IMG/VR virus record: IMGVR_UViG_3300008954_003475
Coordinates: 62,001 to 126,000 of that record
Length of the DNA: 64,000 nt
Direction: 5' to 3' (one strand)
Position numbers and translations under genes: made by a program
The notes under the pieces: model-generated
Databases searched by the model: none
Seen by the model: the letters and a program-made list of their open reading frames with translations, nothing else
Told to the model about the DNA's origin: nothing
In this document: in pieces, positions 40,872 through 57,122 of the stretch
How the letters are laid out: every line of letters begins with the position of its first letter
Numbering within the stretch: position 1 is the stretch's first letter

Positions 40872-41504
40872 ATGGCACTTATACTTTTAAATCCAGGACT
40901 AAGACCATTGGGGCAGTTTGACTTTGCTGACGATGATGCATCCAAAGTAACTGGTGGCGAAATAGCAAAAATTGTAACATATACTTCATCAACTGAGAAG
41001 GCGGCTCCAGATGTAACTGGCAATCAAGACCTGGTACACTTCCAGCTTGATTCATTTTCAGATGGAAGACTTTGCGGATTAGTAGACGAAGGAACTTCCT
41101 CGGAAGAAGATTCTACTCCTGGATATGGAACTTTGATGGGACAAGCAATAGGGGTAACTACCACCATGGTCGCCGGATCAACTATTATGGGCCCATCAAC
41201 TGTTTATAGCTCAGGAAAGGCCACAATCTGGCATCAAGCTGGACTTTATGGAATCACAGAGGAGGCTTTTGTCTCTGGACAGCCAGCTGCAGCTTTTGGG
41301 GCCGGTATTAACACCAGTTTGTTCGGAACAGCAACTGGCGGAGCAACCGCCGGAAAACTAACCACAGTAAGCACAGGCAATGAGGCCGCTTGGTGGCTAA
41401 GCAGAGAATCAGGATCTTCGCTCGTATCAACCACCAACTCCCAGGCCGGGCTTACCGCCGCTACAGAATATCACATAATATATTTCCCCGGACCAACCAA
41501 ATAG
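40872..41504 (+). CDS. Capsid decoration protein paralogue
   Basis: Colinear with the gene upstream of the MCP: MAL.LLNPGLRPLG.FD, GL.DEG, YGTL.G..IG, SGK.T.WHQ.GLYG, SSLVST. Confidence 0.7.
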   Translation: MALILLNPGLRPLGQFDFADDDASKVTGGEIAKIVTYTSSTEKAAPDVTGNQDLVHFQLDSFSDGRLCGLVDEGTSSEEDSTPGYGTLMGQAIGVTTTMVAGSTIMGPSTVYSSGKATIWHQAGLYGITEEAFVSGQPAAAFGAGINTSLFGTATGGATAGKLTTVSTGNEAAWWLSRESGSSLVSTTNSQAGLTAATEYHIIYFPGPTK

Positions 41505-41513
41505 GAATAAACC

Positions 41514-43298
41514 ATGGCTAATGAATCTCAAAACAATTACGCTGCAAAAGCAGCATCCTCAACACCATCTACTGCAGATGGCGCAGCACTTGGATCTGCA
41601 ACTGCCGAATACTCCGATTTATACCTTGCAGACGAAGGCGTTCTCTATTTTGGCAATAATCAAGATGTCTTATTAACACATAATGCAGATACTGGACTTA
41701 CTTTGTCCGGAACAACAAGTGCCATTCTTGTTGCCGGTAGCTTTACAGGAGATCTTACAGGAGATGTGACAGGAGATCTTACAGGAGATGTGACAGGAGA
41801 TGTGACAGGAGATGTGACAGGAGATCTTACAGGAGATGTGACAGGAGATCTTACAGGAGATGTAACGGGCGGAACCATAACTGCCAGCGGAAACTTAACA
41901 GTCGATACCGACACTCTCTTTGTTGATGCATCAGGGGACAAGGTTGGAGTTGGAACGACGAGTCCCGCCTATACTCTTGATGTTCATAACCCTAGTGGTG
42001 CTGGAATGTATACCATAGTTGCATCAGATACTACCTCCATGGCGGAGGGCGTGGGCGGAGGTATTACTTTCCGAGGCGTTTACAATGCCGGGACTTCGTT
42101 AACAGAGTTTGCGAGCATCCGAGCTGCTAAATCAAATGGAACAGCTGTAAATTATGATGCTGACTTAGTTTTCCTTACTAGAGCCGATGGATCAGGAGAG
42201 TCGACTGAGCATATGCGTATTGACTCCTCTGGCAAGGTTGGAATTGGAACGGCGAGTCCCGACTATACACTGGAGGTCAAAAATCCGACTGGCTATGGGA
42301 TGTATACCATAGTTGCAACAGATTCTACCTCCCAGGCTGCGGGCGTGGGCGGAGGCATTACTTTCCGAGGCGTTTACAATGCCGGGACTGGGGTAACAGA
42401 GTTTGCGAGCATCCGAGCCGCTAAATCAAATGGATCAGTCGGAAACTATGATTCTGACTTAGTCTTCCTCACTAGAGCGAATGGATCAGGAGACTCAACT
42501 GAGCATATGCGCATTGATTCTGCAGGAAATGTAGGCATCGGAACAGACTCTCCATCAACAACTTTGGATGTAAGCGGAGACCTAACAGTCTCGGGAACTA
42601 TAACAAATACGGAAATCGCAACGAATACTACTCACAGTGGTGGAGATGGTTCTGATCATGCAGATGTGGCAACGAATACCGCAGGTATCGCTACCAACGT
42701 AACTGCTATTGGGCTCAACACCACTCACAGAGGAAGCAGTGGCTCTGAGCATGCGGATGTGGCAACGAATACTACTCACAGTGGTGGAGATGGTTCTGAT
42801 CATGCAGATGTGGCAACGAATACTACTCACAGCGGTGGAGATGGTTCTGATCATGCAGATGTGGCAACGAATACTGCACACCTCAGTAGCACCGGCGCGG
42901 ATCACAGCTACATCGATCAAGATGTAACCTCTACCGCTACCCCCTCCTTTGCCGGCCTGACTGTCGCGGGAGCAGCAGCGTTCTCTGGTCCGAGCGAAAC
43001 ATTTGTTACATTTACAGATTCAGACGCTACACCCTCTGTAACTGCTGGCAATTTGTTCAAAACCAACACATCAGGTGTTACGATTACAACATTCGATGAT
43101 GGAACTGCCGGACAGACGGTAGTCGTCATCTCTGCTGGAGCCATAGTTTACGATGCTGCCTCTGCCACTTTAAACTGCGGAACCTCAAATATAACAACTG
43201 CCTCTGGCGATGTCACAACATGGGTTTTCGATGGAACTATTTGGTACTTATTGTCTTGGATGGACAATGATGCAGACCTGTCTTCTGGCGGATTCTAA
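41514..43298 (+). CDS. Fibre/adhesin-like virion protein with several internal repeat types
   Basis: YSDLYLADEGVLYFGNNQDVLLTHNADTGLTL module, (GD[LV]T)x10, duplicated 98-aa VG[IV]GT domain, His-containing 17-aa repeats, C-terminal DATPSV...TITTFDDG..GQ module. Confidence 0.7.
   Translation: MANESQNNYAAKAASSTPSTADGAALGSATAEYSDLYLADEGVLYFGNNQDVLLTHNADTGLTLSGTTSAILVAGSFTGDLTGDVTGDLTGDVTGDVTGDVTGDLTGDVTGDLTGDVTGGTITASGNLTVDTDTLFVDASGDKVGVGTTSPAYTLDVHNPSGAGMYTIVASDTTSMAEGVGGGITFRGVYNAGTSLTEFASIRAAKSNGTAVNYDADLVFLTRADGSGESTEHMRIDSSGKVGIGTASPDYTLEVKNPTGYGMYTIVATDSTSQAAGVGGGITFRGVYNAGTGVTEFASIRAAKSNGSVGNYDSDLVFLTRANGSGDSTEHMRIDSAGNVGIGTDSPSTTLDVSGDLTVSGTITNTEIATNTTHSGGDGSDHADVATNTAGIATNVTAIGLNTTHRGSSGSEHADVATNTTHSGGDGSDHADVATNTTHSGGDGSDHADVATNTAHLSSTGADHSYIDQDVTSTATPSFAGLTVAGAAAFSGPSETFVTFTDSDATPSVTAGNLFKTNTSGVTITTFDDGTAGQTVVVISAGAIVYDAASATLNCGTSNITTASGDVTTWVFDGTIWYLLSWMDNDADLSSGGF
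41748..41867 (+). repeat. 12-nt tandem repeat x10 encoding GD(L/V)T
   Basis: Units GGAGATCTTACA and GGAGATGTGACA, read directly. Confidence 0.95.
41940..42527 (+). repeat. 294-nt tandem domain duplication (2 x 98 aa)
   Basis: AAGGTTGGA(G/A)TTGGAACG at 41940 and 42234. Copies share ITFRGVYNAGT, TEFASIRAAKSNG and STEHMRIDS. Confidence 0.9.
42618..42863 (+). repeat. 51-nt repeats encoding ATNTTHSGGDGSDHADV (three near-perfect copies, one degenerate)
   Basis: Copies start at 42618, 42762 and 42813, with a degenerate NTTHRGSSGSEHADV in between. Confidence 0.9.
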
Positions 43299-43349
43299 AC
43301 ACCATACAAAACACCATATAGCGCCGGCACCAAGGCCAAGATCGCTATC

Positions 43350-44258
43350 TTATATGATTCTACGGCTTCTAAGGTGACGTAAGCGCACGAACGCTGGCGC
43401 TCCAGAGCTTAGGTTTGTAAAGGTTCCAAAAGACGCTGGGTTTGGGCGAATGCTGTTTTTTATAAACTTTAACCTTTCACGATATGATGTTAAAAAGTTT
43501 TGATAATGTGATGCAAGAAAGTCTCCAAGCGCTGGAGGCTGATAAGAAATGCCTCCGTCGCTAATTGTGAAGTCTCTTCCTTTTTCAACCATTGATTGAG
43601 ATGCTAATGCCAAAATATATGCACCCTCTGTAACTGCATGGCTAAATGTTTTATATATAATCTCATCTGCAAATGTATATGATGTAAAAAATGGAACCAT
43701 ATTAAATTCAGATAATGCTGAACATAGAAAGCATGCTAAAAGCTCATCACTGAAAACATTGCACTCTTCTGTTACCAACTCTCCATATCCATCTGTAACA
43801 AAGGCTCCATACTCATCTCTCTTTGGCTTTTCTCCATCGGATCTAAGCCTTGCCTTTAACAGCTTCAGCAAGATGTTTAAACCTGTAAGCTCTGATGTTG
43901 AAAAGTCAAAATTTACATCATCACCAAGTGATGCTGCTCCAGCAACTGCAGACGCTTCATCTGTAGTTAAAAATTTAAACTCGTTAGATAGAGAAACACC
44001 GCCTATTGCCGCAGACCAAGTGTCGGTCCACAGACCTTTATCTGCAGAATCACTAACACTATATGTATATACATACAGCCCTGTATCGGTCCTTGAAACT
44101 CCGTCAGATGTTGCTGCTACGATAACACCTCCATCTGGATCTGTAATTTTTATTTCAGGAGTTGAATCTGCATTCATAGCCAGACCATCTGGCCCAAAAT
44201 ACTGAATGCTAAGCTCTACGTCCTCACCTCTAATCGCTTTATTTCTATTGTTTGCCAT
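43350..44258 (-). CDS. Head-tail adaptor/neck protein with N-terminal Ig-like domain
   Basis: N-terminal GVSRTDTGLYVYTYSV..W.D.W Ig-like domain. C-terminal FSDELLACFL..ALSEFN..P...ISDGGISY adaptor-like helical domain. Confidence 0.65.
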   Translation of the reverse strand: MANNRNKAIRGEDVELSIQYFGPDGLAMNADSTPEIKITDPDGGVIVAATSDGVSRTDTGLYVYTYSVSDSADKGLWTDTWSAAIGGVSLSNEFKFLTTDEASAVAGAASLGDDVNFDFSTSELTGLNILLKLLKARLRSDGEKPKRDEYGAFVTDGYGELVTEECNVFSDELLACFLCSALSEFNMVPFFTSYTFADEIIYKTFSHAVTEGAYILALASQSMVEKGRDFTISDGGISYQPPALGDFLASHYQNFLTSYRERLKFIKNSIRPNPASFGTFTNLSSGAPAFVRLRHLRSRRII

Positions 44259-44581
44259 TATCTAGACTCTGCTCTTGGAATTGCTGTTGACGCAGCTTTA
44301 ACTGTAAAATTCTCAAGAGTTGTATACTCCTGCGCATCCACTGTATAGGTGATAATTACCACATAGTCTCCAACTGTTGCAGGTGTGTAATCATAATAAT
44401 ATGTTCCATAATCGCTGTCAATTTCGCTCATTGCCGCAGGAAGGCCAGTCTCAGCAATTCCATCTGGCTTTATTATCGAAGTTATTGTAGGCGAAATATC
44501 GCTTGTTTCGGCAATTCCTCCTTCGGTAACCTGAAGAGGCACTCTTACCGATGATCCTATGCTGTAACTTCCTAATGCCAT
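44258..44581 (-). CDS. Small Ig-like structural protein
   Basis: YGTYYYDYTPATVGDYVVIITY beta-sandwich pattern resembling the N-terminal domain of the adjacent adaptor. Confidence 0.55.
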   Translation of the reverse strand: MALGSYSIGSSVRVPLQVTEGGIAETSDISPTITSIIKPDGIAETGLPAAMSEIDSDYGTYYYDYTPATVGDYVVIITYTVDAQEYTTLENFTVKAASTAIPRAESR

Positions 44582-44584
44582 TTG

Positions 44585-45022
44585 TTACGACTCCTCTACA
44601 TAAACTGCATATAGTGACGATCCTAAACCAATAGCTTCCTCGTAAGTGTTTATAATAGTAATTACATTGCTTGCTACAGAAATTTCATCATTTATCAAAA
44701 CACCATTTAAATATACCGTTAGAGTATTGCTCTTTGGGATTCCAGACAACGTGTATGGGCCAGCGCTGCCAACTACCAACTGAGAGGATAAATCCTCTAC
44801 CGTAAGAATTGATGTAGTTGTAACTGTCTGAAGAATCGTCGTCTCTAAAACATCTGAGTCCAAAACCCTATTCGTAATAGACTTATTATCATCATCCTCT
44901 ACAAACTCTACAAATTTAACTAAATTTCCAGATAAGTCTTTTTTTAAAGAAGTTCTTTTAGTTACAGTAACGCCATCAACCTCTACTTCTACTGCTGGCC
45001 TCTGGTATGTAGTTGAACCCAT
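44585..45022 (-). CDS. Hypothetical structural protein
   Basis: GGAG SD. C-terminal YTLSGIPKSNTLTVYLNGVLI is a common phage structural beta module. Confidence 0.55.
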   Translation of the reverse strand: MGSTTYQRPAVEVEVDGVTVTKRTSLKKDLSGNLVKFVEFVEDDDNKSITNRVLDSDVLETTILQTVTTTSILTVEDLSSQLVVGSAGPYTLSGIPKSNTLTVYLNGVLINDEISVASNVITIINTYEEAIGLGSSLYAVYVEES

Positions 45023-45048
45023 TCTAGATCTCCAAAATAGTTAATTTA

Positions 45049-45055
45049 ATTAGTA
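45049..45055 (-). promoter_or_regulatory. TACTAAT motif immediately after a terminator
   Basis: ATACTAATTAAATTAA begins a few nt after the terminator U-tract, 27 nt before the ATG at 45022. Confidence 0.5.
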
Positions 45056-45058
45056 TAT

Positions 45059-45086
45059 AAAATGCTGGGGGCCGAAGCCCCCAGCA
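45059..45086 (-). terminator. Rho-independent terminator with C(UUCG)G tetraloop
   Basis: Minus strand TGCTGGGGGC-TTCG-GCCCCCAGCA-TTTT. Confidence 0.9.
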
Positions 45087-45138
45087 AGAACAGTTAATTC
45101 ATAATTTTATTTGTTACAATATTTAATCAGTCTTCAGT

Positions 45139-46758
45139 TTAGTCTACGATGCAGAACTGGACCAACCAATCATCGCCATCGAAATCACTGGCGGCCGTTT
45201 CAAAGAGTTCTATATTTATGTGATCGCCTGAAGCTACTAGTCTCCATTCAGAATCGGCAGCAGGTGCCTCACCTCCACTATAAATTCCGTCATATAGCAC
45301 TCCGTTTCTGAATAACATTAAATCACCATCGAACTTATGACCACCAGGAAGCAAATCCTTGCTTGCTTTAACCTGGGCAGTTCGAACATTGCTGGATGGA
45401 GCTCCAAGCGCACCAGCACCTGTAGCAGGAACCCTGGCATTGGTCTTCTTGAAGTCAAGCTGCAGAGTAGCTACAGCGGCAGAGCCATTGAAAGAGAAAG
45501 CCTTAACTCCTCCGTTGTTCGCCGGGCTGAGCGCGAGAAGGTTGGAGCCCAAGCGCACACCCGAAATTTCCTGAAATTCAAGTTTGTCAATATCAATAGC
45601 GGCGTCGGCGGCAATATGAGCATCTGAAAGCGCAGAATACACAGGAAGTGACCCATTCGACACAAGAACAGTATTGTTCCCTCCAAGCGCAAGATGCGCA
45701 GGGTCGTCCCCCGCATCGCCGTAAATCAGATTTCCAGCTGGAATATCAGCAAGATTGGACAAGGCGACCTGATCAGCCCCAATATGATCACCGGTGACTC
45801 CACCTGCGGTGATTTTAAGCGCATCTTCTGCAATTGAAAGACCACCAGTTGCTCCAGCTGTAAGGTTTATATCAACGGTTCCAGCGTTAGCAACAAGGCC
45901 GCTTCCGAAAGCATAATCAGTAGGCATAGAAACCTGGACCCAGGAGGCATCAGATTTGCGAGTATAAAGGATTCTAGAGCTTATATCTAAAACTGTAGAA
46001 CCTGTTTCAATAGTATCCGCCACCCAAGCGCCACCGACTCGCTCCTGAACCGTGTTGGCGAGACCGTCAAAGGCACCGCCTCCAGTTGGAGAGGCAGAAA
46101 CAAGAAATCTATCTCCATTGTTGGAAGAGGTCGGAGCGTTGACCCTTCCCAATACAGGCTCTTCATAAGAAAGACCCTTAATGAGGTCGTCTACATACTT
46201 TTTGCGAGCAGCATCATTGTCGCCAGCAGGTGCTGGGAGGCCACCGAGCTGCTGACTGTTCATATTCACAACTGCATTTGGTGCAGTCATCTGGTCTAAC
46301 CTATGAGCTTGAACGCCAGCACTGAAGTTATTCACCTGAGAGTGAGTAATATCAATATCTCTGTGACTAGCAGCAGTTAAACGACCCTGAGCATCAACCG
46401 TGAATGTTGGGATCTGATGATCGTTGGCCTCGACGCCGTAGTCCCCAGCTGTAACAGCGGTGTTTGCAAGTTTGTCAGCTGTAACAGCATCATCAACAAT
46501 CATATTTGTTGCAACCTGAACTTCAGAGACGGTGCCGCCGGCGACCGAGCCCAATAGTCTGTTCGCGACAGCAACATCCTGCATCTTAGCATATGTTACA
46601 TTGTCATCCAGAATTTTGGAAGTTTCAACTGCATTGGCAGCAAGGTGACTTGCGGCAATGGAAGTCCCTTTAACGCGAAGCGAATCGCCGGTGTCTTCGA
46701 TGGTGATTTCGTCACCCATGCCGGTCATATCTATTTGTTTTCCTTTAATTTTAGCCAT
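45139..46758 (-). CDS. Fibre-like virion protein (539 aa) with a DUF2793-like segment
   Basis: VTADKLA and TVDAQGRLTAAS fibre motifs, DAARKKYVD, GDRFLVSASPTG..AFDG....VQERVGGAW. GC-rich, highly biased codons like the capsid genes. Confidence 0.6.
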   Translation of the reverse strand: MAKIKGKQIDMTGMGDEITIEDTGDSLRVKGTSIAASHLAANAVETSKILDDNVTYAKMQDVAVANRLLGSVAGGTVSEVQVATNMIVDDAVTADKLANTAVTAGDYGVEANDHQIPTFTVDAQGRLTAASHRDIDITHSQVNNFSAGVQAHRLDQMTAPNAVVNMNSQQLGGLPAPAGDNDAARKKYVDDLIKGLSYEEPVLGRVNAPTSSNNGDRFLVSASPTGGGAFDGLANTVQERVGGAWVADTIETGSTVLDISSRILYTRKSDASWVQVSMPTDYAFGSGLVANAGTVDINLTAGATGGLSIAEDALKITAGGVTGDHIGADQVALSNLADIPAGNLIYGDAGDDPAHLALGGNNTVLVSNGSLPVYSALSDAHIAADAAIDIDKLEFQEISGVRLGSNLLALSPANNGGVKAFSFNGSAAVATLQLDFKKTNARVPATGAGALGAPSSNVRTAQVKASKDLLPGGHKFDGDLMLFRNGVLYDGIYSGGEAPAADSEWRLVASGDHINIELFETAASDFDGDDWLVQFCIVD

Positions 46759-46894
46759 TTTAATTTTCTCCTTTTAAATGGTTGTTAGCAGCCTTCTTTG
46801 TTTAGGAAGGCATAAAAACTTAACATAAGGTATAAGAAATAAAACAAAAGAAACTTGCCTATTGGCAAACTAAAGATAGATTCAGCAAAGTGTG

Positions 46895-47261: not shown

Positions 47262-47287
<26 letters not shown>
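46895..47287 (-). CDS. Hypothetical protein (probable start ATG 47269)
   Basis: ORF. ATG at 47269 overlaps the upstream stop (ATGGATAA). Confidence 0.55.
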
Positions 47288-48687: not shown

Positions 48688-49482
48688 ATGTCAGCAGGAA
48701 TAAAAGGATCACAAATACGAGATGAAACAGTAACCGCTGCAGATCCAGGCCCAAATTCTGTTGGAAACAGTGAGCTAGCTAGCACAGCAATCTCTAGCCA
48801 AACAGAAAAGAATCCAGCTGTAAACGGTGATTCTGTTTTAATCAGCGACTCTGCTGACTCCGGAGCCTTGAAGAGGGTTCAGATTGGAAACCTCGGAATT
48901 GGCGGAGGTGGTGGCGACTCAAATATGATTGAAGATGCCGATCATGATACGAAAATACAAGTAGAAGAATCTGCAGATGAAGATAAAATAAGATTTGATA
49001 CTGCTGGTGCTGAAAGAGTAATTATTGATAATGCTGGCAATGTCGGTATTAATATATCAACACCTAAAACCATACTTGATACTCACCACAACCCTACTGG
49101 GTTGTCTAATGATACCGGTGGGGGAGAAGTAGTTACTTTCGGCACTGGCAACCTAACTGCTGGGAAAATTTATTTTCTTAACAGCAGTGGAGCTTGGACT
49201 GAAACAGACGCCGATGCTATCCCAACAAGTGATGGTCTATTAGCCATTGCATTAGGCTCAGCACCATCAAATGGAATGCTTTTACGCGGCTTCTTTGATG
49301 CAACTACTTATCTTTCAAATTTTATTTCAGGTCTTCCTGTTTATCTTTCTGCAACAGCGGCAACTATGGATACAACACAACCTTCAGGTACCGGGAAAAT
49401 AGTCCGATGTATAGGCTATTGTACAAACACGGCCAATGTCATTTACTTTAATCCAAGCTCTACTACAGTAGAGTTATCATAA
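48688..49482 (+). CDS. Virion fibre/decoration-like protein (264 aa)
   Basis: GDSNMIEDADHDTKIQVEESADEDKIRFDTAGAER..I...GNVGI module. C-terminal GKIYFL...W..TDAD...GLLAIAL...PVYLS...PSGTG.IVR.IGY capsid-cement-like module. Confidence 0.6.
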   Translation: MSAGIKGSQIRDETVTAADPGPNSVGNSELASTAISSQTEKNPAVNGDSVLISDSADSGALKRVQIGNLGIGGGGGDSNMIEDADHDTKIQVEESADEDKIRFDTAGAERVIIDNAGNVGINISTPKTILDTHHNPTGLSNDTGGGEVVTFGTGNLTAGKIYFLNSSGAWTETDADAIPTSDGLLAIALGSAPSNGMLLRGFFDATTYLSNFISGLPVYLSATAATMDTTQPSGTGKIVRCIGYCTNTANVIYFNPSSTTVELS

Positions 49483-50560
49483 TGCCAATTAATAAAGTCA
49501 ATGGGAATTTACTTTCAGCTATTAACAAAATGCAAGGAATTGCCGATTCAGCTATCACCAAAATAAATGGACAAACTATTGGAGAGGCAATACACAGCCC
49601 ACTCTGGGTTGCAGTAGGGGCACAAAGCTTGCATACTCTACAGATGCAGACGCCTCAACCTGGACCGAGGTTGCGGTCGCTAGTGTTTCGGCCTTTAAAG
49701 ATCTCACATTCGGAAAGAATGGTAGTGGCACAGATACATGGTATGGGTGTTCCACCACAGATTCAAAAGGAGCCGTTTACAGCACAGACCCCACAGACGC
49801 CAATTCGTGGTCAACAGTTAATCCTCCGGGTTCCGGCGGCGGCACAACTATAGAATATAGTGCGACTGAAACTTTGATAATGGGCAGAGAACATGAAAAC
49901 TATTCAATTCGACGCTCCACAGACTTCGGGGTTACATGGGTTAACACGACAATTAATAATATTCCAGGCAATGATCCAAAAGCATCAGACTCTTTAGCAA
50001 CTGACGGAAATGGGTTGTGGATGGCAGGAATGGGAACACTAGGCGTTATATTAAAATCTTATGATGATGGTATCAATTGGTATAAGTCTACCGATTTGGG
50101 TTCCGACAAACATATTGGATTAGAATATAATAATGGCGCATGGATAGCAACGGAACAAGGCGAAACAATTAACAGATGTATATCTGTGGCTCAAAGCGAT
50201 ACCACAGATACATGGACCCAAACTGCTCCTCCAACATGGAATCGTCCTGCTGATGCAATTGCTCATGTAACTGGCAACACTTGGATGCTTGGCGCTACTA
50301 GACGAAATATGTATAAAAGCACAGATAATGGAGCAACTTGGACAGCTGTAACAAGCCTTACTAATGTTGCTGAAACATCTGCACAAACAAACAATAATGC
50401 CTACTCAATGGCTTCTGACGGCACTACAGTAGTGGCTACTGGCCGTAACGGCTATATTAATGTGTCAACCGATTTGGGCCAGTCTTGGACTGTGGCTCAT
50501 ACCATGTCAAATAATCAACACATGGTAGCTGTTGAATATAATAAGGTTAAGCCTTATTAA
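49482..50560 (+). pseudogene. BNR/Asp-box beta-propeller gene split by a 1-nt frameshift (359 aa if repaired)
   Basis: Frame switches after WVAVG at the G4 tract 49617-49620. The -1 frame reads TKLAYSTDADASTW... without stops into the 49874..50560 ORF. Asp-boxes STDFGVTW, SYDDGINW, STDNGATW, STDLGQSW. Confidence 0.75.
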
Positions 50561-50856: not shown

Positions 50857-50904
50857 ATAAGTGTCCTCTTACATAATGTTGTTTTAAATTAATAGAAGAA
50901 AAGA

Positions 50905-51408
50905 CTATTTCGCATCATGTTTCTCTATATACCTTCTGTGTGTAGAACAAATAGTATTACCATTTGGAGCCTGTCTCTTACACCTGTTGCCATCGGTTTT
51001 TACAAAATCACACTGTATAAATTCAAATCCGACCACATCGGTGTATGTATTATTCTCTTGATGATTAAGGGCCAAATCCTTAACCTCATCCATCTCTATA
51101 GGCTCAGACAGAATAGTCTCTTCCATAACGATGGGCCCAAAAGACTCTTCTTCAACCTCATCTTTCTCTTCCAAAGTAATATATGGATCTGGATTAATCA
51201 TTTCCATATATTGTTCACCAGAAGGTTTTAAGTCTGCAAGATTTTCTTCATAGTCGAAAAATGTGTCATACTTTTCCAACTCATAATCTTCTTCATCCAT
51301 AATTACATGATTCTTTCCTCGCCTGGAAAAAACAGAAGTTTTGGCCCTATTTTTAAGAGGAGTTGCTTCAATAAATTTTAATCTAGATTGTAATCTTTTG
51401 GGTATCAT
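50905..51408 (-). CDS. Acidic protein with a C-terminal CCCH-type zinc finger
   Basis: QCDFVKTDGNRCKRQAPNGNTICSTH. Confidence 0.6.
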   Translation of the reverse strand: MIPKRLQSRLKFIEATPLKNRAKTSVFSRRGKNHVIMDEEDYELEKYDTFFDYEENLADLKPSGEQYMEMINPDPYITLEEKDEVEEESFGPIVMEETILSEPIEMDEVKDLALNHQENNTYTDVVGFEFIQCDFVKTDGNRCKRQAPNGNTICSTHRRYIEKHDAK

Positions 51409-51439
51409 TTTTCTTATTTATATAATAAAATTACCATAA

Positions 51440-51475
51440 AAACAAAAAAGGTACAGTGGAAACCACTGTACCTTT
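51440..51475 (-). terminator. Rho-independent terminator after the major capsid gene
   Basis: 13-bp stem AAAGGTACAGTGG/CCACTGTACCTTT (51447-51475) followed on the minus strand by TTTGTTTTT. Confidence 0.9.
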
Positions 51476-51499
51476 AATGTTGTCTTAAAGACTGAGCTG

Positions 51500-52552
51500 T
51501 TAAGCAGTCACAGTACCTGTAGCGACACCACGAGGGTTGACGATACCAATACCAATGATTTCATTAACGACCCAACCAAGCTTAAGCTGCTTGGGCTCAT
51601 CGGCAGGAAGAACCTCAATGTCCTGACGGACAGGCATCACACCAACAAACTCTGGATCAGCACAAGCAAAGGCACGACCGGCTGGAACAACCTTGGATAC
51701 GACAATGTCGGCACCAAAGATGTGACCATAAAGTCCGGTCTGAAGCAACTCACGCTGAGTCACTGGATCGACCTGCGATCCACCGCCTGCACCAGCAGAC
51801 TCCCAGTTCAGCATATCAGTAAATTCATTAATGTTGAGGAAGTACTTAGAAGTAACTAAGTCCCAACGATCAATGCTTCGCTTAAGATCAAGCATACCAG
51901 ACTTAGAAAGCTGAGTGGTATTAGTTCCGCCTGTAGCGTTACCATCAGCATTAGAAAGGTCTAGCGAAACAGGAGCATTCTCACCACCGCCATTTGTAGA
52001 ATCTCCAGCGAACTGAAGAGCAGCAAAGACGTTAGCATCCTCCTGTGCCTGGATCTCCTGACGAGCCTTCTGCTGCGCACGATCAACAACGTTGAATCGA
52101 CGCCGCTTGACTTCAGCGATACGAACCGTTGGGTTTGAAACAACCTCAAACTCAGGGACGGTCACGCGATCACCAAAGACGCGAGACTCAGGGGCAGAAC
52201 CATTACTGGATACAACTACGGCCGCGACATCAATATCACGATCATAAACTGGAAGAGCGCCTTGTGGCAGCGGATCAACAACTAATGCCTTACGAGCGAC
52301 ACCCTGATAATCAAGGTTTCGACGGATCGGATTAGCCATTGCCTGACCTAAAGCAATCTTTCCTTCTTGGGTCATCAAAGCCTGCTTGATCATCTCATCT
52401 CTCTGGCTATCATTCAAGCCAGGCGCGGTGGCCTGAGCATTGCTTGATGGCTGAAGATCTTCGATAACAGAAGCATACTTGACGATTTGACTTAGAGCCT
52501 CCTGAACATTGGAGGCATTGATTTCACCATGTGTATTAAATAGTGTAGACAT
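51500..52552 (-). CDS. Major capsid protein (HK97 fold, 350 aa)
   Basis: IRRNLDYQGVARKALVVDPLPQG..PVYDRD (E-loop), KARQEIQAQEDANVFAAL (spine helix), GHIFGADIVVSKVVPAG..F (P-domain). Strong codon bias and a strong terminator after it. Confidence 0.9.
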   Translation of the reverse strand: MSTLFNTHGEINASNVQEALSQIVKYASVIEDLQPSSNAQATAPGLNDSQRDEMIKQALMTQEGKIALGQAMANPIRRNLDYQGVARKALVVDPLPQGALPVYDRDIDVAAVVVSSNGSAPESRVFGDRVTVPEFEVVSNPTVRIAEVKRRRFNVVDRAQQKARQEIQAQEDANVFAALQFAGDSTNGGGENAPVSLDLSNADGNATGGTNTTQLSKSGMLDLKRSIDRWDLVTSKYFLNINEFTDMLNWESAGAGGGSQVDPVTQRELLQTGLYGHIFGADIVVSKVVPAGRAFACADPEFVGVMPVRQDIEVLPADEPKQLKLGWVVNEIIGIGIVNPRGVATGTVTA

Positions 52553-52561
52553 AATATCCTC

Positions 52562-53218
52562 CTATGGACTAGTCGGGTTAAGACTAAGCAGGTATACTGC
52601 GTAGTACTCGACAGCAGTGTTAGTTAACCCTGCTGACGCTCTATTGGTTGAGACAAGTGACGAATCTGCCACTGCTCCACAGAAAACTCCAAGCTGATCA
52701 CCGCCTGTAGTTCCAAGACGACCTGTTGCCGCCTCTCCAAAGACAGCTGTATTAACAGCCGTCATAGCATCAATACCATTGGTCGCATGAGCGGTAGCGG
52801 CAGAGCCGTTAACGCCATAGAGACCAGGCTGATGCCACACGGTAACCTTACCGGAAGCACGATTAGTCGCAGGACCAATCGTTACTGCACCGGACTCACT
52901 TGTAGCCGCTCCAGTATTTGAGCCAATCAGTTCTCCAAACAAAGTACCATACTGAGCAATACCCTCGTCGGCAAGGCCGCCTAAGGCACCATCTGTACGA
53001 ACACTGAGCTGAAAGTTCCAAAGAATCGGAGCTAAAAGACCAGCACCACCGCCTACACCCATAGGACCAACATCGCCAACATCAGCAGCGTAACCATCAC
53101 CCGCAGAATCTGCGGCCAAGGATACATATTCACCACCAGTAATTGCAGCAGCATCGGCACCATCGAGATCAAACGTACCAAGGGGTCTTAACCCTGGGTT
53201 TAATAATTTAAGAGCCAT
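52562..53218 (-). CDS. Capsid decoration/cement protein; start revised to MALKLL
   Basis: GGAG SD before ATG 53218. Directly upstream of the MCP with the same codon bias. Gly/Ala-rich beta pattern ASGKVTVWHQPGLYGV. Confidence 0.7.
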   Translation of the reverse strand: MALKLLNPGLRPLGTFDLDGADAAAITGGEYVSLAADSAGDGYAADVGDVGPMGVGGGAGLLAPILWNFQLSVRTDGALGGLADEGIAQYGTLFGELIGSNTGAATSESGAVTIGPATNRASGKVTVWHQPGLYGVNGSAATAHATNGIDAMTAVNTAVFGEAATGRLGTTGGDQLGVFCGAVADSSLVSTNRASAGLTNTAVEYYAVYLLSLNPTSP

Positions 53219-53248
53219 TTTAATATTCTCCATATTAAATTTTACATT

Positions 53249-53273
53249 GATATGTTCAACCATTGAACATATC
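53249..53273. promoter_or_regulatory. Perfect 11-bp hairpin in the leader of the decoration/MCP genes
   Basis: GATATGTTCAA-CCA-TTGAACATATC with no U-tract on the minus strand. Confidence 0.55.
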
Positions 53274-53305
53274 CTTTAGTCATTAGACTGTAACTTAAAA
53301 GCTGA

Positions 53306-55966
53306 TTACTTACTTCTTTTTTCAAGAACATCACGCACCCAGGCGTAGTTTGCTCTATAGTTTCCCGTTGGAGCACTAAGTGCCACTCCGTGTGTCTGAC
53401 GCTTTTGTTCTAATCCGTTTTCAACCAAGCCACCTCTTCCGATAGAGTCTAAGACAACTACCGCCTTTGGATGAGCCGAGTGAATCAGGTCAACTCCAGT
53501 TTCATCATGCACATTATATAGGGATTTGTAATCACCCTTTGGTGTTTCCGCCTTTTCGTCATACAGTCCTTTAAGACCTGTAAAATAAGATCGGAGATAT
53601 TGGTCGCTATTGTTAAGATCTGTTACAGCATCTTTACAATAGGCCTTCGAAACATCATCTGCGCCCTTAAAGAGCTCAGAATCATCGTAAATTGTATTGT
53701 TATTAGTAGAACTTAAAGCTTCTTCTGCAATTTTCTTAAGAGAATCAAATCTTTCTAGTCTACTTTCTTCAAAAATATCATGTGTTTGCTCCGCATATTT
53801 CATGAGCAACTCTATTCTTTCAGAAGCATCTACGCCTAATCTAAAGGCTCTACGGCGTCGGCGCCTAACGTCTCGACCCATCCTCTGCTTCTTTCTTCCG
53901 GCATAACCCTGGCCTCGTAAGCCTCTGATTTTTCGGCCCCTTGTTAGCCTTCGGCTTCTTCTTCTGCCCATAAGCTTTCCTCCAGCTACGCCTCTTTCTG
54001 CAAGGCCATAACCTGCGGCGGCAATAAATGCTTCATTTATAGCCCTTTGTGCATCGCCTCCCTGTTCAACAAGCTTTACATTATAAACACCTCCAGCGCC
54101 TTTTAGGTCATCCAGACCCTCTCTGACTGATGCTACAAGAAATGGATCTGTTGGGTTTGGGCCTCCTCGAACTCTTCTTACAAAAGCATAATGCAAATCT
54201 ATCCCATCATCCGTAGTAAAGGGTGGGACCAATCTAACATAAAATGGCATTCTATATACTCTCTTAAGCTGCTCTAAAGACTGTCTTAAAGCAGCTTGAG
54301 CCGCTGGATCTCCAGCATCCGCTGCAGCCTGTAACTCCGCAAGCCCTTGAGCCGCTCTTTTCCAATCTCCAGATCTTGCACTGCTTGTTATCTCCTCTAC
54401 TGATGGAGGAAGGTCTTCGGGGGTTTGACCGCCACTATCTTCCGGCGGTAGATCACCACCCTTGTCTTCATCATCGTCCTGCCAAGGAAGATCCCCCTGG
54501 CCTGCCTGATAGGCAAGGTAACCAATGCCTGCCACGGCAGCTCCTCCAAGAAGCCACTTTAACCACTTTCGGCCCTTAGCAGCTTTAACAGCATCCTCTC
54601 CAACATTAACGGCTAATTTTAAATGAGTATTTCCAATATCTTGAAGCTTTTGTATAACCCTTACATACTCATCATCAGCAATTCTTCCTGCTCGCTTAGC
54701 ATCGTCAAGAACAGTAACTATCCTGTCCATATCATCAGCCTCTCGCAACAAAACTTTATTTCCAGTTTGCTCAGCTAATTGACGCATTGAATTCTGTGTT
54801 TCTCCAATGTGAAGATGCAGCTCTGCTTTTCCGCCAGCAACATCCCCAACGCTTCCGCCGCCGCCTCCGCCGCCGCCAGCGCCAGCGCCGCCTCGACCTA
54901 TTGACGTTGCCTTAGCATCTACCTCAGATATAGCATTGGTAACCTGCTTCATCTCTGAATCAAGTCCATTCACATAGTTCTTAAAGCCTCTCATGCGGTT
55001 GCCGAAACCAGCCTGCTGAGTTGCTACTTGATTTATTCCCATAAATATATCACCAGTTGAGGCGTTGTCCCCAATCCTAAGTGACTGTCTCGCATTCTGT
55101 TCGGCAAGCTGAGCATACGAAAACCCCTTTTCTAAACTTTTTCTCATACTAGCACGAAGAGCGACCGGACGTATTTTATCAAGAGACTTCCAAGCGGCCT
55201 TTAAGTCTTTCACATCACCAGATCTTAAATACTGCTTTAATGAAACATCTATCTTTTCAATACCTTTTACTATCTTTTCTCGATTCCTCTCCATCTCCAG
55301 AAGCTCATCTGGAGTATATTTCCCTGCTCCACGAGCAGCCTCTTCGCCCAAACTCTTGGCGCTTCCCCTCGTAGCTCTTGCAAGATCTCGTTCTCGCTTA
55401 GCCGCTTCGGCTGCTGCTCCGCCGGTTCTTGTCCCGGCCGCTGCCGTATCACCTGCTTTTCCAAAAGCAGAATAATCACCTGACTTAATAGCCTTCCATA
55501 CCTTTTGTGCATTCTCTTTCCCAACAGCCCTTTCAACTATAAGAATCATCTCGTCTTCAGACTTTCCTGCCTTTACCGCATCCCCAAGAGCAGCGCCAAG
55601 CTTTTGAATCTTCTGTGTTTGTGCTCCGCCTCGATTACTGGCGGAAAACAAAGCCCTAAAGCCTTCCGGAAGATCCAGGCCTCTTATCGAACCTCCTGCT
55701 GCAATGGTGCCTTCCGTTGCAACAGCCGCTGCTCTGCGCGCAGCAGCAGCGGCTGCTTCAGCGGCAGCTTTGTCGGCCGCCCGGGCAGCGGCAACAGCAG
55801 CATCGGCCTCTCTTACGGCCTTAGCACCCCTAAGGGCATCGTCAAATCCCGAGACCACCCCGGCCTCTTTCTTTAAAGACTGATCTAATCTCTTCTCTTG
55901 AAGCCTGAACATAGTTTCAAAATATGCATTTATAGCGCTGTCTTCAGATATTTTATTTATACGCAT
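53306..55966 (-). CDS. Putative internal head / ejection protein (886 aa) with one TM helix
   Basis: Ala/Gly/Arg-rich helical protein in the head module. TM-like KWLKWLLGGAAVAGIGYLAY, an Arg-rich block, and hydrophobic-x-K-x-A motifs near both ends. Confidence 0.5.
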   Translation of the reverse strand: MRINKISEDSAINAYFETMFRLQEKRLDQSLKKEAGVVSGFDDALRGAKAVREADAAVAAARAADKAAAEAAAAAARRAAAVATEGTIAAGGSIRGLDLPEGFRALFSASNRGGAQTQKIQKLGAALGDAVKAGKSEDEMILIVERAVGKENAQKVWKAIKSGDYSAFGKAGDTAAAGTRTGGAAAEAAKRERDLARATRGSAKSLGEEAARGAGKYTPDELLEMERNREKIVKGIEKIDVSLKQYLRSGDVKDLKAAWKSLDKIRPVALRASMRKSLEKGFSYAQLAEQNARQSLRIGDNASTGDIFMGINQVATQQAGFGNRMRGFKNYVNGLDSEMKQVTNAISEVDAKATSIGRGGAGAGGGGGGGGSVGDVAGGKAELHLHIGETQNSMRQLAEQTGNKVLLREADDMDRIVTVLDDAKRAGRIADDEYVRVIQKLQDIGNTHLKLAVNVGEDAVKAAKGRKWLKWLLGGAAVAGIGYLAYQAGQGDLPWQDDDEDKGGDLPPEDSGGQTPEDLPPSVEEITSSARSGDWKRAAQGLAELQAAADAGDPAAQAALRQSLEQLKRVYRMPFYVRLVPPFTTDDGIDLHYAFVRRVRGGPNPTDPFLVASVREGLDDLKGAGGVYNVKLVEQGGDAQRAINEAFIAAAGYGLAERGVAGGKLMGRRRSRRLTRGRKIRGLRGQGYAGRKKQRMGRDVRRRRRRAFRLGVDASERIELLMKYAEQTHDIFEESRLERFDSLKKIAEEALSSTNNNTIYDDSELFKGADDVSKAYCKDAVTDLNNSDQYLRSYFTGLKGLYDEKAETPKGDYKSLYNVHDETGVDLIHSAHPKAVVVLDSIGRGGLVENGLEQKRQTHGVALSAPTGNYRANYAWVRDVLEKRSK

Positions 55967-56382
55967 GTAACTTCCTGCTCTAAAATCTCATCAATTGTTC
56001 TTTCGATCTTATAAGCCAATTTGATGTTTCCCTCTTCTATAGCCGCTCTCGCCAAGCTTCTAAGGTCATCAACAACTTCATCCTGAAGGTCATCACCATC
56101 CTCTATAAGTCCATCTTCTGCAGATTCATCATCTGCGACTTCATCATCTTGAGCATCGCCCGTAAAAACTGATTTTACAGTCTCCTTTACCTCTTGAGCT
56201 TTTTGTTTAACCTTTTCCAAAAGATTCATATTTTCGTTAGCCTCTTGAGCAACATCTGCGGCAATTTTTCTCTGAAGAATCTCTGCTCTATGAACAGTAT
56301 CTACAATGCTCTTTTCAAGCTCTTGCCATACTTCGCTGCTTTGGTAATGGGCTCGATCTTCCTTGCTCCATGAATTAGGCAT
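55957..56382 (-). CDS. Acidic head-associated protein (scaffold/core-like)
   Basis: GGAG SD, RKIAAD motif, acidic tract, C-terminal LAYKIERTIDEI helix. Confidence 0.5.
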   Translation of the reverse strand: MPNSWSKEDRAHYQSSEVWQELEKSIVDTVHRAEILQRKIAADVAQEANENMNLLEKVKQKAQEVKETVKSVFTGDAQDDEVADDESAEDGLIEDGDDLQDEVVDDLRSLARAAIEEGNIKLAYKIERTIDEILEQEVTCV

Positions 56383-56420
56383 TTATATCTCCAATATTGT
56401 ATATCATCACATTTTAAATA

Positions 56421-56427
56421 ATTAGTA
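56421..56427 (-). promoter_or_regulatory. TACTAAT motif
   Basis: AAACTACTAATTATTTAAAAT overlapping the end of the upstream gene, 39 nt before ATG 56382. Confidence 0.45.
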
Positions 56428-56429
56428 GT

Positions 56430-57122
56430 TTACAACAACATGAATTCCAGGGTTCCAATCGCTGCAGATGGAGGCCCCGTACATATCGAAACTCCCGGAT
56501 GACTATCCGTAGGCTGAGAAGAGGTTAGCTTGCCGTCAAGCCCTACATATAAAGTGCAATTAACCGGATAAATCTGTGTTGTATCAAACTGATCTGTTGC
56601 ATATATACCTCTTTGGTAATGAAGAGTAACTCGACCACTACCTACTGTAGTGTCGTCTCCCGGTTTGCCTGCAACTCTATAAATATAATTTACAATTATC
56701 CTATAGCTATCATATGTTCCATCGCCATCGGCATCATGGTTTAATTCCGTTCCAGCCGGAATAGTCACAACTCCATTTACAGAATTCAAAACAATAGATA
56801 TAGTAGAGGTAAAGCTACTTTCTATAATATTTGGATATTCCATAACGCCAGTAACCTCAACGGTTCCAACGCGATTTCCATTATCATCTATTTCAGAAGA
56901 TTGAGCCTCAATCACTAAGACCTCATCTATTTGAGCCTTTGTAAACGCAGAGGTTCTAACATCATCAATAATACCTAACGGGGCAGTTCCATCGCTTATA
57001 CTTGCAACTATATCATTTCCAATTAATCCAAGCTGGGCAAACATGCCGGGTTCAAACTCTGCCGTTGGATCAACGGGCAAGCTCATTGGCAATGCATTAC
57101 CACTATGAATAACTTTAAGCAA
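56430..57122 (-). CDS. Divergent capsid decoration-like protein with a central insertion
   Basis: TTG start with GGGGAG SD. GSGRVTLHYQRGIY parallels ASGKVTVWHQPGLY, and LYVGLDGKLT parallels ...GKLTT/GRLGT of the two other decoration genes. Confidence 0.55.
   Translation of the reverse strand: MLKVIHSGNALPMSLPVDPTAEFEPGMFAQLGLIGNDIVASISDGTAPLGIIDDVRTSAFTKAQIDEVLVIEAQSSEIDDNGNRVGTVEVTGVMEYPNIIESSFTSTISIVLNSVNGVVTIPAGTELNHDADGDGTYDSYRIIVNYIYRVAGKPGDDTTVGSGRVTLHYQRGIYATDQFDTTQIYPVNCTLYVGLDGKLTSSQPTDSHPGVSICTGPPSAAIGTLEFMLL

What the first reader, a model, noticed from the sequence alone, without database searches (positions are those of the whole stretch)
40872..57122. Three capsid-decoration paralogues, one in an independently oriented decoration+fibre cassette
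Seen: 52562..53218 (next to the MCP) and 40872..41504 are colinear over their whole length, and 56430..57122 keeps the SG(K/R)VT..(H/Y)Q.G.Y core with a central insertion. The 40872 copy is on the opposite strand, has its own TACTAAT motif and is followed 9 nt later by a repeat-rich fibre gene. Inference: position-specific decoration trimers on a large capsid, with one paralogue acting as the adaptor that mounts a head fibre, i.e. a plug-in capsid-surface module.
Basis: partly seen in the sequence, partly recalled or inferred. Interest (0 to 1): 0.6.

Follow-up and report, generated by a model that had tools for sequence, protein, structure and literature searches.

The report
Capsid decoration paralogue coupled to a fibre
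An uncultivated marine jumbo phage carries, besides its normal capsid "cement" protein, a second copy that always travels with a fibre gene as a self-promoted two-gene insert, most likely a socket-and-fibre set that puts fibres on the phage head; binding itself is not shown.

Summary
The window is part of a 222-kb fragment of a marine jumbo phage whose major capsid protein (MCP) is 46.5% identical to Bacillus phage G gp27.

- **decA and decB:** 52562..53218(-) (decA, beside the MCP) and 40872..41504(+) (decB) are true, colinear paralogues (38% identity, E 3e-34).
- **Fold:** the decA model aligns end to end with beta-tulip/gpD-like trimeric decoration proteins (Z 7.5-9.7 in an unbiased PDB search). 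It also matches phage G gp26.
- **Third gene:** 56430..57122(-) is only a remote relative. The shared core motif is real (profile-profile 72.5%, E 3e-5), and about 95 residues are inserted relative to 130-aa family members. Its decoration role is probable, not shown.
- **Cassette:** decB plus the 594-aa fibre is an accessory unit. All seven decB orthologues examined are followed 9-20 nt later by a fibre with the same about 65-aa N-terminus and a differing distal part. All carry TACTAAT upstream.
- **Distribution:** the cassette sits in at least three genomic contexts. Three near-complete relatives lack it. One of them has the flanking genes adjacent.

Head-fibre mounting on decB is the best reading; phi29 gp8.5 is a fused precedent. 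It remains inference, because the complex prediction gave no answer.

The parts
40741..43349 (+). Accessory cassette (promoter-like motif + decB + fibre) inserted between two conserved minus-strand genes
   Evidence: In relative G003 (317 kb, 94% complete, no cassette) the orthologues of the two flanking genes are 30 nt apart. Here they are 2,609 bp apart.
40813..40819 (+). TACTAAT motif, probable late-promoter element of the cassette
   Evidence: It is conserved 40-55 nt upstream of the decB ATG in all six relatives although the flanks differ. In the window, 6 of 13 copies lie in short spacers upstream of same-strand structural genes.
40872..41504 (+). decB: fibre-linked paralogue of the capsid decoration protein (210 aa, P0001)
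   Evidence: 38% identity, E 3e-34 to decA over the full length. It shares 42 family-conserved positions with decA, including the N-terminal arm, and has 21 clade-specific conserved positions. Its clade is monophyletic, SH-aLRT 99.
41505..41513 (+). 9-nt spacer; AGGA Shine-Dalgarno overlaps the decB stop codon
   Evidence: Read directly. The same TA(G/A)GGA(A/G)TAAA layout occurs in six relatives, with spacers of 9, 9, 9, 9, 10 and 20 nt.
41514..43298 (+). Modular fibre protein (594 aa, P0004). It has a conserved N-terminal about 65 aa, a (TGD[LV])n array, a duplicated 98-aa module, five 17-aa repeats and a C-terminal beta-sandwich.
   Evidence: PHROG tail-fibre families 9942 and 18345, E 1.6e-11 and 2e-9. 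Pfam Phage_depo_C at residues 516-578, 25.4 bits. Tandem repeats at 41745..41863, 41939..42517 and 42618..42904. The N-terminus is 47-80% identical to the fibres that follow decB orthologues, while the remainder differs and lengths are 594, 783 and 1100 aa.
52562..53218 (-). decA: the general beta-tulip/gpD-like capsid decoration (cement) protein, immediately upstream of the MCP
   Evidence: AF2 model pLDDT 78. VIA Z 9.7 BB1, 9.1 Sf11, 8.8 HFTV1, 8.7 TW1, 8.5 XM1, 8.4 Pam3, each over residues 1..~217. Foldseek BFVD rank 2 is phage G Gp26. The gene sits directly before the MCP in the 44 IMG/VR loci that reach it.
51500..52552 (-). Major capsid protein (350 aa)
   Evidence: phrog_2522, E 1.3e-69. 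46.5% identity to Bacillus phage G gp27.
56430..57122 (-). P0003 (230 aa): remote relative of the decoration family, probable second capsid accessory protein
   Evidence: hhalign short-form profile against the dec family: 72.5%, E 3.3e-5. The same profile against PDB finds phiCD508 gp48 minor capsid protein as best hit, E 1.3e-3. The gene is conserved (60-86% identity) 3.3-4.9 kb upstream of decA in 32 relative loci. Family member P0387 lies directly upstream of an MCP.
56661..56948 (-). Inserted domain of P0003 (residues about 59-154), a small beta-sandwich
   Evidence: It is absent from the about 130-aa family members. It is the only confidently folded part of the AF2 model. No significant structural match, Z <= 4.1.
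40171..40740 (-). Left flank gene (189 aa) of the cassette
   Evidence: Its orthologue is at G003:21784-22350.
43350..44258 (-). Right flank gene (302 aa) of the cassette
   Evidence: Its orthologue is at G003:22381-23286, 74% identity. It is present in all four relatives searched.

Best explanation
Shown: decA is the phage's general trimeric beta-tulip cement protein, the structural and positional counterpart of phage G gp26. It is encoded directly upstream of the MCP. decB is a full-length paralogue that keeps the family's N-terminal arm (MAL.LLNPGLRPLG.FD) and core. It is encoded in a separate, oppositely oriented two-gene unit with its own TACTAAT promoter-like element, 9 nt ahead of a modular fibre gene. 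This unit is accessory and moves as a whole.

Inferred: decB trimers bind the same kind of three-fold capsid sites as decA through the shared arm and base, replacing decA at some sites. The outer face of decB, which carries 21 clade-specific conserved positions such as W174/W175, would dock the N-terminus of the trimeric fibre on the shared three-fold axis. The capsid would then bear fibres whose variable distal domains bind host-surface glycans for reversible first adsorption. This would be a split-gene version of the phi29 gp8.5 head fibre, where base and stalk are one chain.

P0003 is most likely a second, more conserved capsid accessory protein of the same remote superfamily, with an inserted beta-sandwich domain.
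For: - **Paralogy:**
- **Fold of decA:** (Z 7.5-9.7; the top 13 of 48,161 chains are all phage decoration proteins). Phage G Gp26 is found in BFVD.
- **Fused precedent:** the phi29 head-fibre base gp8.5-N is also matched (Z 5.1, 108 residues aligned). It is a trimeric base at quasi-three-fold sites carrying a fibre (PMC6542822).
- **Linkage:** 7 of 7 decB orthologues are followed by a fibre with the same N-terminus, with spacers of 9-20 nt.
- **Reciprocity:** the fibre's first about 15 residues were found only next to decB.
- **Single origin:** the fibre-linked clade is one side of a branch with support 99.
- **Accessory and mobile:** three relatives that are 94-100% complete have one dec gene only. 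An empty site exists in G003. The cassette sits in other contexts in L004/L139 (between glycosyltransferases and thymidine kinase) and in L007/L136.
- **Late co-expression:** TACTAAT is conserved upstream of decB in six relatives and lies upstream of structural genes in the window.
- **Capsid-binding arm:** it is conserved between decA and decB.
Against: - No direct evidence of binding. Complex prediction gave no answer, which counts neither way.
- decB itself was not folded; its fold is inferred from 38-44% identity to the folded family.
- Fibre residues 16-72 are a generic repeat unit that occurs inside many unrelated fibres without any dec gene nearby. Only about 15 N-terminal residues are cassette-specific.
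- The fibre matches PHROG families annotated as tail fibres. A second 1027-aa fibre elsewhere in the genome shares its shaft (64% identity), so a tail location is not excluded.
- Nothing shows site selectivity of decA against decB.
- The 130-141 aa relatives of P0003 lie among non-structural genes.
Confidence: 0.5

Rival explanations
1. decB is simply a second or alternative cement protein, changing capsid surface or stability. The adjacent fibre is a tail or neck fibre. The two genes travel together because they form one late transcription unit, not because they touch.
For: The fibre hits PHROG tail-fibre families. Its shaft is shared at 64% identity with another long fibre in the genome. Residues 16-72 are a generic fibre repeat. 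The complex prediction gave no support.
Against: The pairing is strict and reciprocal across 58-100% divergence and at least three genomic contexts, with near-constant 9-nt coupling. The fibre N-terminus stays conserved while the rest is replaced, which is the pattern expected of an attachment end matched to a fixed partner. No tail gene travels with the pair.
Confidence: 0.25
2. decB is a non-virion assembly factor (chaperone or attachment catalyst) for the fibre, derived from a decoration protein.
For: Fibre genes are often accompanied by a dedicated small assembly gene (general phage knowledge). The two genes appear translationally coupled.
Against: Such chaperone genes usually lie downstream of the fibre gene, not upstream (general phage knowledge). 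decB keeps the whole decoration fold length and the capsid-binding N-terminal arm almost unchanged. That conservation would be unnecessary for a chaperone.
Confidence: 0.1
3. This rival concerns the third gene only. P0003 is not a decoration protein. It shares a beta-hairpin motif or remote fold with the family and has another role in head assembly or elsewhere.
For: - Pairwise similarity is only 20 residues.
- The AF2 model is poor (pLDDT 44).
- There are no Pfam or PHROG hits.
- Short-form relatives lie beside Fe-S, Ro60-vWA and Lar genes.
- It is far more conserved (60-94% identity) than decA (35-68%), which is unusual for a surface protein.
Against: - hhalign gives 72.5% probability.
- The best PDB profile hit is a phage minor capsid protein.
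- HMM scores lie far above shuffled and reversed controls.
- The gene has a fixed place in the head module between the protease-bearing protein and decA-MCP.
- Family member P0387 lies directly upstream of an MCP.
Confidence: 0.35

Closest known systems
Beta-tulip / lambda gpD-like trimeric decoration (cement) proteins (TW1 gp56, XM1, Pam3, E217, Sf11, T1, HFTV1, Borrelia BB1, phiCD508 gp48; herpesvirus triplex as distant kin)
   Same: The decA model aligns over residues 1..~217 with Z 7.5-9.7. The gene is directly upstream of the MCP. An N-terminal arm is conserved. Herpesvirus triplex proteins and lambda gpD appear lower in the same list.
   Different: - There is no sequence-level match to Pfam HDPD or any PHROG.
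- The protein is about 60 residues longer than most members, with two low-confidence loops.
- A second full-length paralogue is encoded elsewhere and tied to a fibre gene. This was not described in the papers read.
Bacillus phage G gp26 (capsid decoration) with gp27 (MCP)
   Same: The MCPs are 46.5% identical. gp26 sits directly upstream of gp27, as decA does here. Foldseek finds the predicted gp26 structure at rank 2 (probability 1.00, TM 0.60).
   Different: No detectable sequence similarity by BLASTP, HMM or hhalign. No decB- or P0003-like gene was found in phage G.
phi29 head fibre gp8.5
   Same: It is a homotrimer whose N-terminal base binds quasi-three-fold capsid sites and carries a fibre on the three-fold axis (PMC6542822). 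The base (6qyy_A) is matched by the decA model at Z 5.1 over 108 residues.
   Different: In phi29 the base and the fibre are one polypeptide, and the base contacts an Ig domain of the MCP. Here the presumed base (decB) and the fibre are separate adjacent genes, the fibre is unrelated in sequence, and the structural match is weak.
Sf14 / Bas63 capsids with two decoration proteins
   Same: Beta-tulip trimers sit at three-fold sites and there is a second decoration protein. In Bas63 one decoration gene lies more than 10 kb outside the structural module (PMC12609058).
   Different: There the second protein is a Hoc-like, Ig-domain monomer at hexamer centres. It is not a paralogue of the beta-tulip protein, and no separate fibre gene is coupled to it.
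Phage L Dec (site-selective decoration); T4 gp23/gp24 (paralogue specialised for one lattice position)
   Same: These are precedents, from general knowledge and the title and abstract of PMC6449081, for decoration that discriminates among quasi-equivalent sites and for capsid paralogues with position-specific roles.
   Different: They have different folds. Nothing in the present data shows site selectivity.

Membership tests
Beta-tulip / gpD-like capsid decoration proteins | Fold: N-terminal arm plus beta-tulip plus mixed alpha/beta subdomain, matching solved members | tested here: met
   decA: Z 9.7, 9.1, 8.8, 8.7, 8.5 and 8.4 over 121-135 aligned residues spanning the whole model. The top 13 of 48,161 chains are all decoration proteins; the top unrelated (non-capsid) chains score Z <= 3.0. 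decB was not folded. Its fold is inferred from 38% identity, E 3e-34.
Beta-tulip / gpD-like capsid decoration proteins | Gene next to the major capsid protein gene | tested here: met
   decA: met in the window and in the 44 IMG/VR loci that reach the MCP. decB: not met; it lies about 10 kb away on the other strand. P0003: 3.3 kb upstream, within the head module.
Beta-tulip / gpD-like capsid decoration proteins | Trimer bound at three-fold and quasi-three-fold sites of the HK97-fold lattice | not testable with these tools
   This needs a virion structure or a reliable MCP-dec complex model.
Beta-tulip / gpD-like capsid decoration proteins | Membership of P0003 (third gene) | tested here: inconclusive
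   hhalign 72.5%, E 3.3e-5, over 57 columns only. PDB profile hit to phiCD508 gp48, E 1.3e-3. Atlas lead to a PF02924 cluster at 0.84 only. The AF2 model is unusable outside the insert.
Pfam PF02924 (HDPD, lambda head decoration protein D) | Sequence match above the gathering score | tested here: not met
   No Pfam family at E <= 0.01 for P0001, P0002 or P0003, nor for ten short-form relatives.
Phage fibre proteins (PHROG 9942 / 18345, annotated tail fibre) | Profile match and repeat-rich modular build | tested here: met
   P0004: E 1.6e-11 and 2e-9. Three tandem-repeat arrays. C-terminal Phage_depo_C beta-sandwich at 25.4 bits against a cut-off of 25.
Head fibre mounted on a capsid base (phi29 gp8.5-type design) | Fibre physically attached to a three-fold capsid-binding base | tested here: inconclusive
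   Complex prediction gave 'no answer'. The only support is genetic: strict, reciprocal linkage, plus a weak structural match of the base (Z 5.1).
Mobile accessory cassette (moron-like unit) | Own promoter; presence/absence between close relatives with an intact empty site; more than one insertion context | tested here: met
   TACTAAT is conserved upstream in six relatives. An empty site exists in G003. Three near-complete relatives lack the cassette. Contexts differ in L004/L139 and L007/L136. Promoter activity itself was not tested.

The most novel reading that the evidence does not exclude
Marine jumbo phages related to phage G exchange a self-contained 'socket plus fibre' cassette. A duplicated beta-tulip cement protein has become a dedicated capsid socket. 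It lets trimeric receptor-binding fibres with interchangeable distal domains be mounted on the head, giving the capsid itself a horizontally swappable adsorption organ (a split-gene analogue of the phi29 head fibre).
Probability: 0.4. Interest if true: 0.7.

Novelty: new variant of a known kind. Interest (0 to 1): 0.5.

Why it matters
Decoration proteins are usually treated as passive cement, and head fibres as fused, lineage-specific oddities. Here comparative genomics gives a concrete, testable case in which a cement-protein paralogue and a separate fibre gene form one mobile unit in abundant, uncultivated marine jumbo phages.

If decB is the socket, three things follow:
- It explains how large capsids can gain or lose surface fibres without touching the core head module.
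- It gives a sequence marker: a decB-type gene followed by a MAN..Q.NY-type fibre start marks head-fibre-bearing phages in metagenomes.
- It offers a natural two-part display scaffold.

The work also assigns a fold and a role to a family of more than 490 unannotated metagenomic proteins (decA). It flags a second unannotated family of more than 500 (P0003) as a probable capsid accessory protein.

Tried and rejected
- **Complex prediction.** Complex prediction with decB x3 plus fibre residues 1-75 x3 returned 'no answer', score 0.00. It is not used as evidence either way.
- **P0003 fold.** AF2 of P0003 gave pLDDT 44; the alignment was too shallow (70-94% identity). Only the insert folded, and a wide PDB search on it gave Z <= 4.1.
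- **Family libraries.** Pfam and PHROGs gave nothing for P0001-P0003 or for ten short forms. tblastn of decA against the phage collection gave nothing.
- **Phage G at sequence level.** BLASTP, an HMM over the whole genome and hhalign against gp26 were all negative. Only the fold search connects them.
- **'Fibre N-terminus is a dedicated anchor domain'.** Rejected in that form. Residues 16-72 are a repeat unit present in up to five copies inside 450-2000-aa fibres of 79 other viral contigs, with no dec-like gene within 4 kb.
- **'decB is a recent in-genome duplicate of decA'.** Not supported. decB groups (support 98) with MCP-adjacent dec genes of another lineage, not with the window's own decA clade (the tree is unrooted).
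- **TACTAAT as a globally enriched word.** Rejected. Only its placement is non-random.
- **Second fibre.** The 208-aa gene upstream of the second fibre (G000:3892-4518) is not dec-like.
- **TARA scaffold.** The 348-kb scaffold carrying decB orthologue P0130 could not be searched as a whole. Whether every decB-bearing genome also keeps decA is therefore known only for this one.
- **Cassette borders.** No flanking repeats of note.


Full report
**Setting.** The window is bases 62001-126000 of a 221,878-bp IMG/VR virus record judged 66% complete. Nearly all genes run on the minus strand. The 350-aa product of 51500..52552(-) is the major capsid protein (MCP): phrog_2522, E 1.3e-69. Its best cultured relative is Bacillus phage G gp27 at 46.5% identity. 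Relatives in IMG/VR and Tara-type marine assemblies reach 317-348 kb. This is therefore an uncultivated marine jumbo phage distantly related to phage G.

**Checking the observation.** P0001 (40872..41504 +, here 'decB') and P0002 (52562..53263 -, 'decA') align colinearly end to end at 38% identity, E 3e-34.
- No third close copy exists in the record.
- P0003 (56430..57122 -) shares with either copy only a 20-residue local match, E 0.01.
- decB is flanked by minus-strand genes. TACTAAT lies at 40813..40819. The decB stop lies 9 nt before the ATG of a 594-aa ORF that holds 12-nt, 294-nt and 51-nt tandem arrays.

**What decA is.** decA belongs to a family of more than 490 unannotated metagenomic protein clusters.
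- An AlphaFold2 model built on 53 family members has mean pLDDT 78.
- Foldseek E-values against PDB were not significant, but the top rows were almost all phage capsid decoration proteins.
- Realignment gave Z 8.4-10.3 over the whole model.
- An unbiased search of 48,161 PDB representatives put 13 phage decoration/cement proteins on top. These were Borrelia BB1 (9.7), Sf11 (9.1), HFTV1 (8.8), TW1 (8.7), XM1 (8.5), Pam3 (8.4), E217, Patience, FCWL1, phiCD508 gp48 and Adjutor. Lower in the list came P23-45, herpesvirus triplex proteins, YSD1, lambda gpD and phiTE Dec. This is the beta-tulip/gpD-like family described in the literature (PMC12609058, PMC11972413).
- Against predicted viral structures, rank 2 was phage G Gp26 (probability 1.00, TM 0.60). 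Its record annotates it as capsid decoration, and it sits directly upstream of gp27. It was reported in virions by proteomics and cryo-EM (PMC12484599).
- Sequence methods do not see this link.
- In the 44 IMG/VR relative loci that reach the MCP, the dec gene is immediately upstream of it.

decA is thus the general cement protein of this clade.

**What decB and its neighbour are.** decB has its own orthologue group, eight clusters at 58-100% identity. Every member whose context could be read is followed on the same strand by a gene that starts MAN(E/S/D)..Q.N(Y/Q). These are the window, a near-identical IMG/VR contig, P0126, P0128, P0129, P0130, P0131 and P0132.
- That gene shares the next roughly 60 residues at 47-80% identity.
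- The spacers are 9, 9, 9, 9, 10 and 20 nt. An AGGA sequence overlaps the decB stop codon.
- Beyond about residue 65 the fibres differ, and their lengths are 594, 783 and 1100 aa.
- The fibre matches PHROG fibre families and ends in a Phage_depo_C-type beta-sandwich.
- Its N-terminus is unique in the genome.
- The fibre-linked dec proteins form one side of a branch with SH-aLRT 99. That branch joins, with support 98, the MCP-adjacent dec genes of a different lineage rather than the window's own decA clade (unrooted, quick search). decB is therefore an old or transferred paralogue, not a recent local duplicate.
- decB nevertheless carries the N-terminal arm variant NPGLRPLG of the window's own decA lineage, not the QPG(I/V)(E/Q)PLG of the lineage it groups with.
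- Forty-two family-conserved positions, including nine in the arm, are kept in decB. Twenty-one positions are conserved only within the decB clade; F62, R66, C68, N170, E171, W174, W175 and P206 are among them.

**The cassette is accessory and mobile.**
- Three relatives that are 94-100% complete (317, 332 and 335 kb, one with terminal repeats) have a single dec gene.
- In the 317-kb relative, the orthologues of the two genes flanking the cassette are 30 nt apart. In the window they are 2,609 bp apart. This is a clean empty site.
- In the Tara 348-kb scaffold and in L139 the pair lies between glycosyltransferase genes and a thymidine kinase gene. In L007/L136 the neighbours differ again. In L140 the upstream gene is co-oriented.
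- TACTAAT is present 40-55 nt upstream of the decB ATG in all six relatives although the surrounding sequence differs.
- In the window the word is not enriched overall. However, 6 of 13 copies lie in the 4.3% of intergenic bases, upstream of same-strand genes that include large virion-type proteins. I read it as a late-promoter element. Its activity is untested.

**How it most likely works.**
- *Shown:* the fold of decA, the paralogy, the strict reciprocal linkage, the unit's mobility and the conserved upstream motif.
- *Inferred:* decB trimers use the shared arm and base to occupy three-fold sites of the same MCP lattice. Their clade-specific surface holds the N-terminus of the trimeric fibre. 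The capsid then bears fibres with exchangeable distal domains.

A solved precedent for this design exists in fused form. phi29 gp8.5 is a trimer whose 110-residue base sits at quasi-three-fold sites and whose C-terminal part is the head fibre (PMC6542822). That base appears among the structural matches of the decA model at Z 5.1 over 108 residues, which is a weak match. Head fibres aid ordered cell-wall contact in phi29 (PMC7602432) and flagellum contact in phage 7-7-1 (PMC12796354).

**Limits of the inference.**
- The complex prediction returned no answer.
- Fibre residues 16-72 are a generic repeat unit. It occurs in up to five copies inside fibres of 79 other viral contigs that have no dec-like gene within 4 kb. 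Only the first roughly 15 residues are cassette-specific.
- A second fibre in the genome (1027 aa) shares the shaft at 64% identity but has another N-terminus. This fits modular anchors but also keeps a tail location possible.
- Nothing speaks to position specificity.

**The third gene.** P0003 is highly conserved, at 70-94% identity among its closest 120 clusters. In 32 relative loci it lies at a fixed place 3.3-4.9 kb upstream of decA. It sits downstream of a 1150-aa protein that carries a head-maturation-protease domain.
- A profile search of 1.8 billion representatives found many proteins of about 130 aa that match residues 1-58 and about 155-230. P0003 therefore carries an insert of about 95 residues.
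- That short-form profile matches the dec family at 72.5% probability, E 3.3e-5, over 57 columns.
- Its best PDB hit is phiCD508 gp48 minor capsid protein, E 1.3e-3. The decA model also matches that protein structurally (Z 7.6).
- The dec HMM scores real P0003-family proteins far above shuffled and reversed controls. The aligned stretch is G..T..SGKvTvW.q.GLY ... N ... G.LT.
- One family member lies directly upstream of an MCP.
- Against this, three short forms lie among non-structural genes, the AF2 model failed and the insert has no clear fold match.

I rate 'remote member of the decoration superfamily and capsid accessory protein' at about 0.65.

**Comparison and novelty.** decA is a new, sequence-divergent member of a known fold family. 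In the papers read, I did not find a beta-tulip paralogue tied to a separate fibre gene in a mobile, self-promoted unit. The nearest cases are phi29 gp8.5 (fused) and Bas63/Sf14 (a second, unrelated decoration protein, in Bas63 encoded outside the structural module). I therefore class the finding as a new variant of a known kind. The mechanism is inferred from comparative genomics, not demonstrated.

**Steps not taken.** No part of the window was treated as human-like, and no alternative genetic code was needed.

Noticed in passing
window 48688..50560 (+): A second plus-strand island in the minus-strand genome. It holds a 264-aa protein hitting the same fibre PHROGs as P0004 and sharing its 'RID..G.VGIG' motif, a 123-aa ORF, and a 228-aa protein with BNR/Asp-box (sialidase-like) repeats. 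It may be another surface or fibre cassette. No TACTAAT lies upstream.
   Followed up: partly
window 57771..61223 (-): A 1150-aa protein carries a head-maturation-protease domain at residues about 126-221 (phrog_18299, E 1.4e-11). The prohead protease appears fused to a very large protein.
   Followed up: no
window 45139..46758 (-): A 539-aa protein has a 'head decoration' PHROG hit (phrog_2647, E 1.4e-13, residues 138-203) plus fibre/Ig-type hits and a weak DUF2793 match. Its homologue lies close to the decB cassette in L007/L136. It could be a Hoc-like capsid protein.
   Followed up: no
G000:C1:780-3863 (-), outside the window (locus L144): A 1027-aa fibre shares 64% identity with P0004 residues 121-356 (the duplicated shaft module) but has a different N-terminus. 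The 208-aa gene upstream of it is not dec-like.
   Followed up: partly
L056-L135 (IMG/VR contigs); P0004 residues 16-72: The segment 'P..ADG..LG....E.SD.YLAD.....FG..QD..L.H..D.GL.L' is a widespread fibre repeat unit of about 55 residues. It occurs 1-5 times inside 450-2000-aa proteins of many 5-70-kb viral contigs. It has no Pfam model.
   Followed up: partly
L004 3792..6227 (-) and neighbours: In the 348-kb Tara relative the cassette is flanked by three glycosyltransferase genes, and nucleotide-sugar genes (epimerases, UDP-glucose dehydrogenase) lie beyond the thymidine kinase gene. One glycosyltransferase is an 811-aa protein with precomputed Glycos_transf_1 and Tubulin (PF00091) hits. This may indicate glycosylation of the fibre or capsid.
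   Followed up: no
window 24808, 36060, 39401, 45049, 56421 (all -) and 40813 (+): TACTAAT sits in short AT-rich spacers 14-59 nt upstream of structural-type genes (1080-aa, 1970-aa, 667-aa baseplate-like, 145-aa and 141-aa products, and decB). It is a candidate late-promoter core for this phage clade.
   Followed up: partly
window 61472..63739 (-): A 755-aa protein at the upstream end of the head module has a DUF192 (PF02643) domain at residues 242-339, E 2.8e-18, and no PHROG hit. It is unclear whether this is the portal.
   Followed up: no
L009 / G005 (IMGVR_UViG_3300007513_000004, 223,402 bp): A second IMG/VR record carries a 100%-identical decB and fibre start at its very end, and no decA was found in it. 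It is probably another fragment of the same or a near-identical genome, broken inside the repeat-rich fibre gene.
   Followed up: no
window 50905..51408 (-): A 167-aa ORF directly downstream of the MCP has a weak HNH-endonuclease hit at its C-terminus (phrog_4842, E 0.0066). A strong hairpin terminator lies at 51447..51475 between it and the MCP.
   Followed up: no
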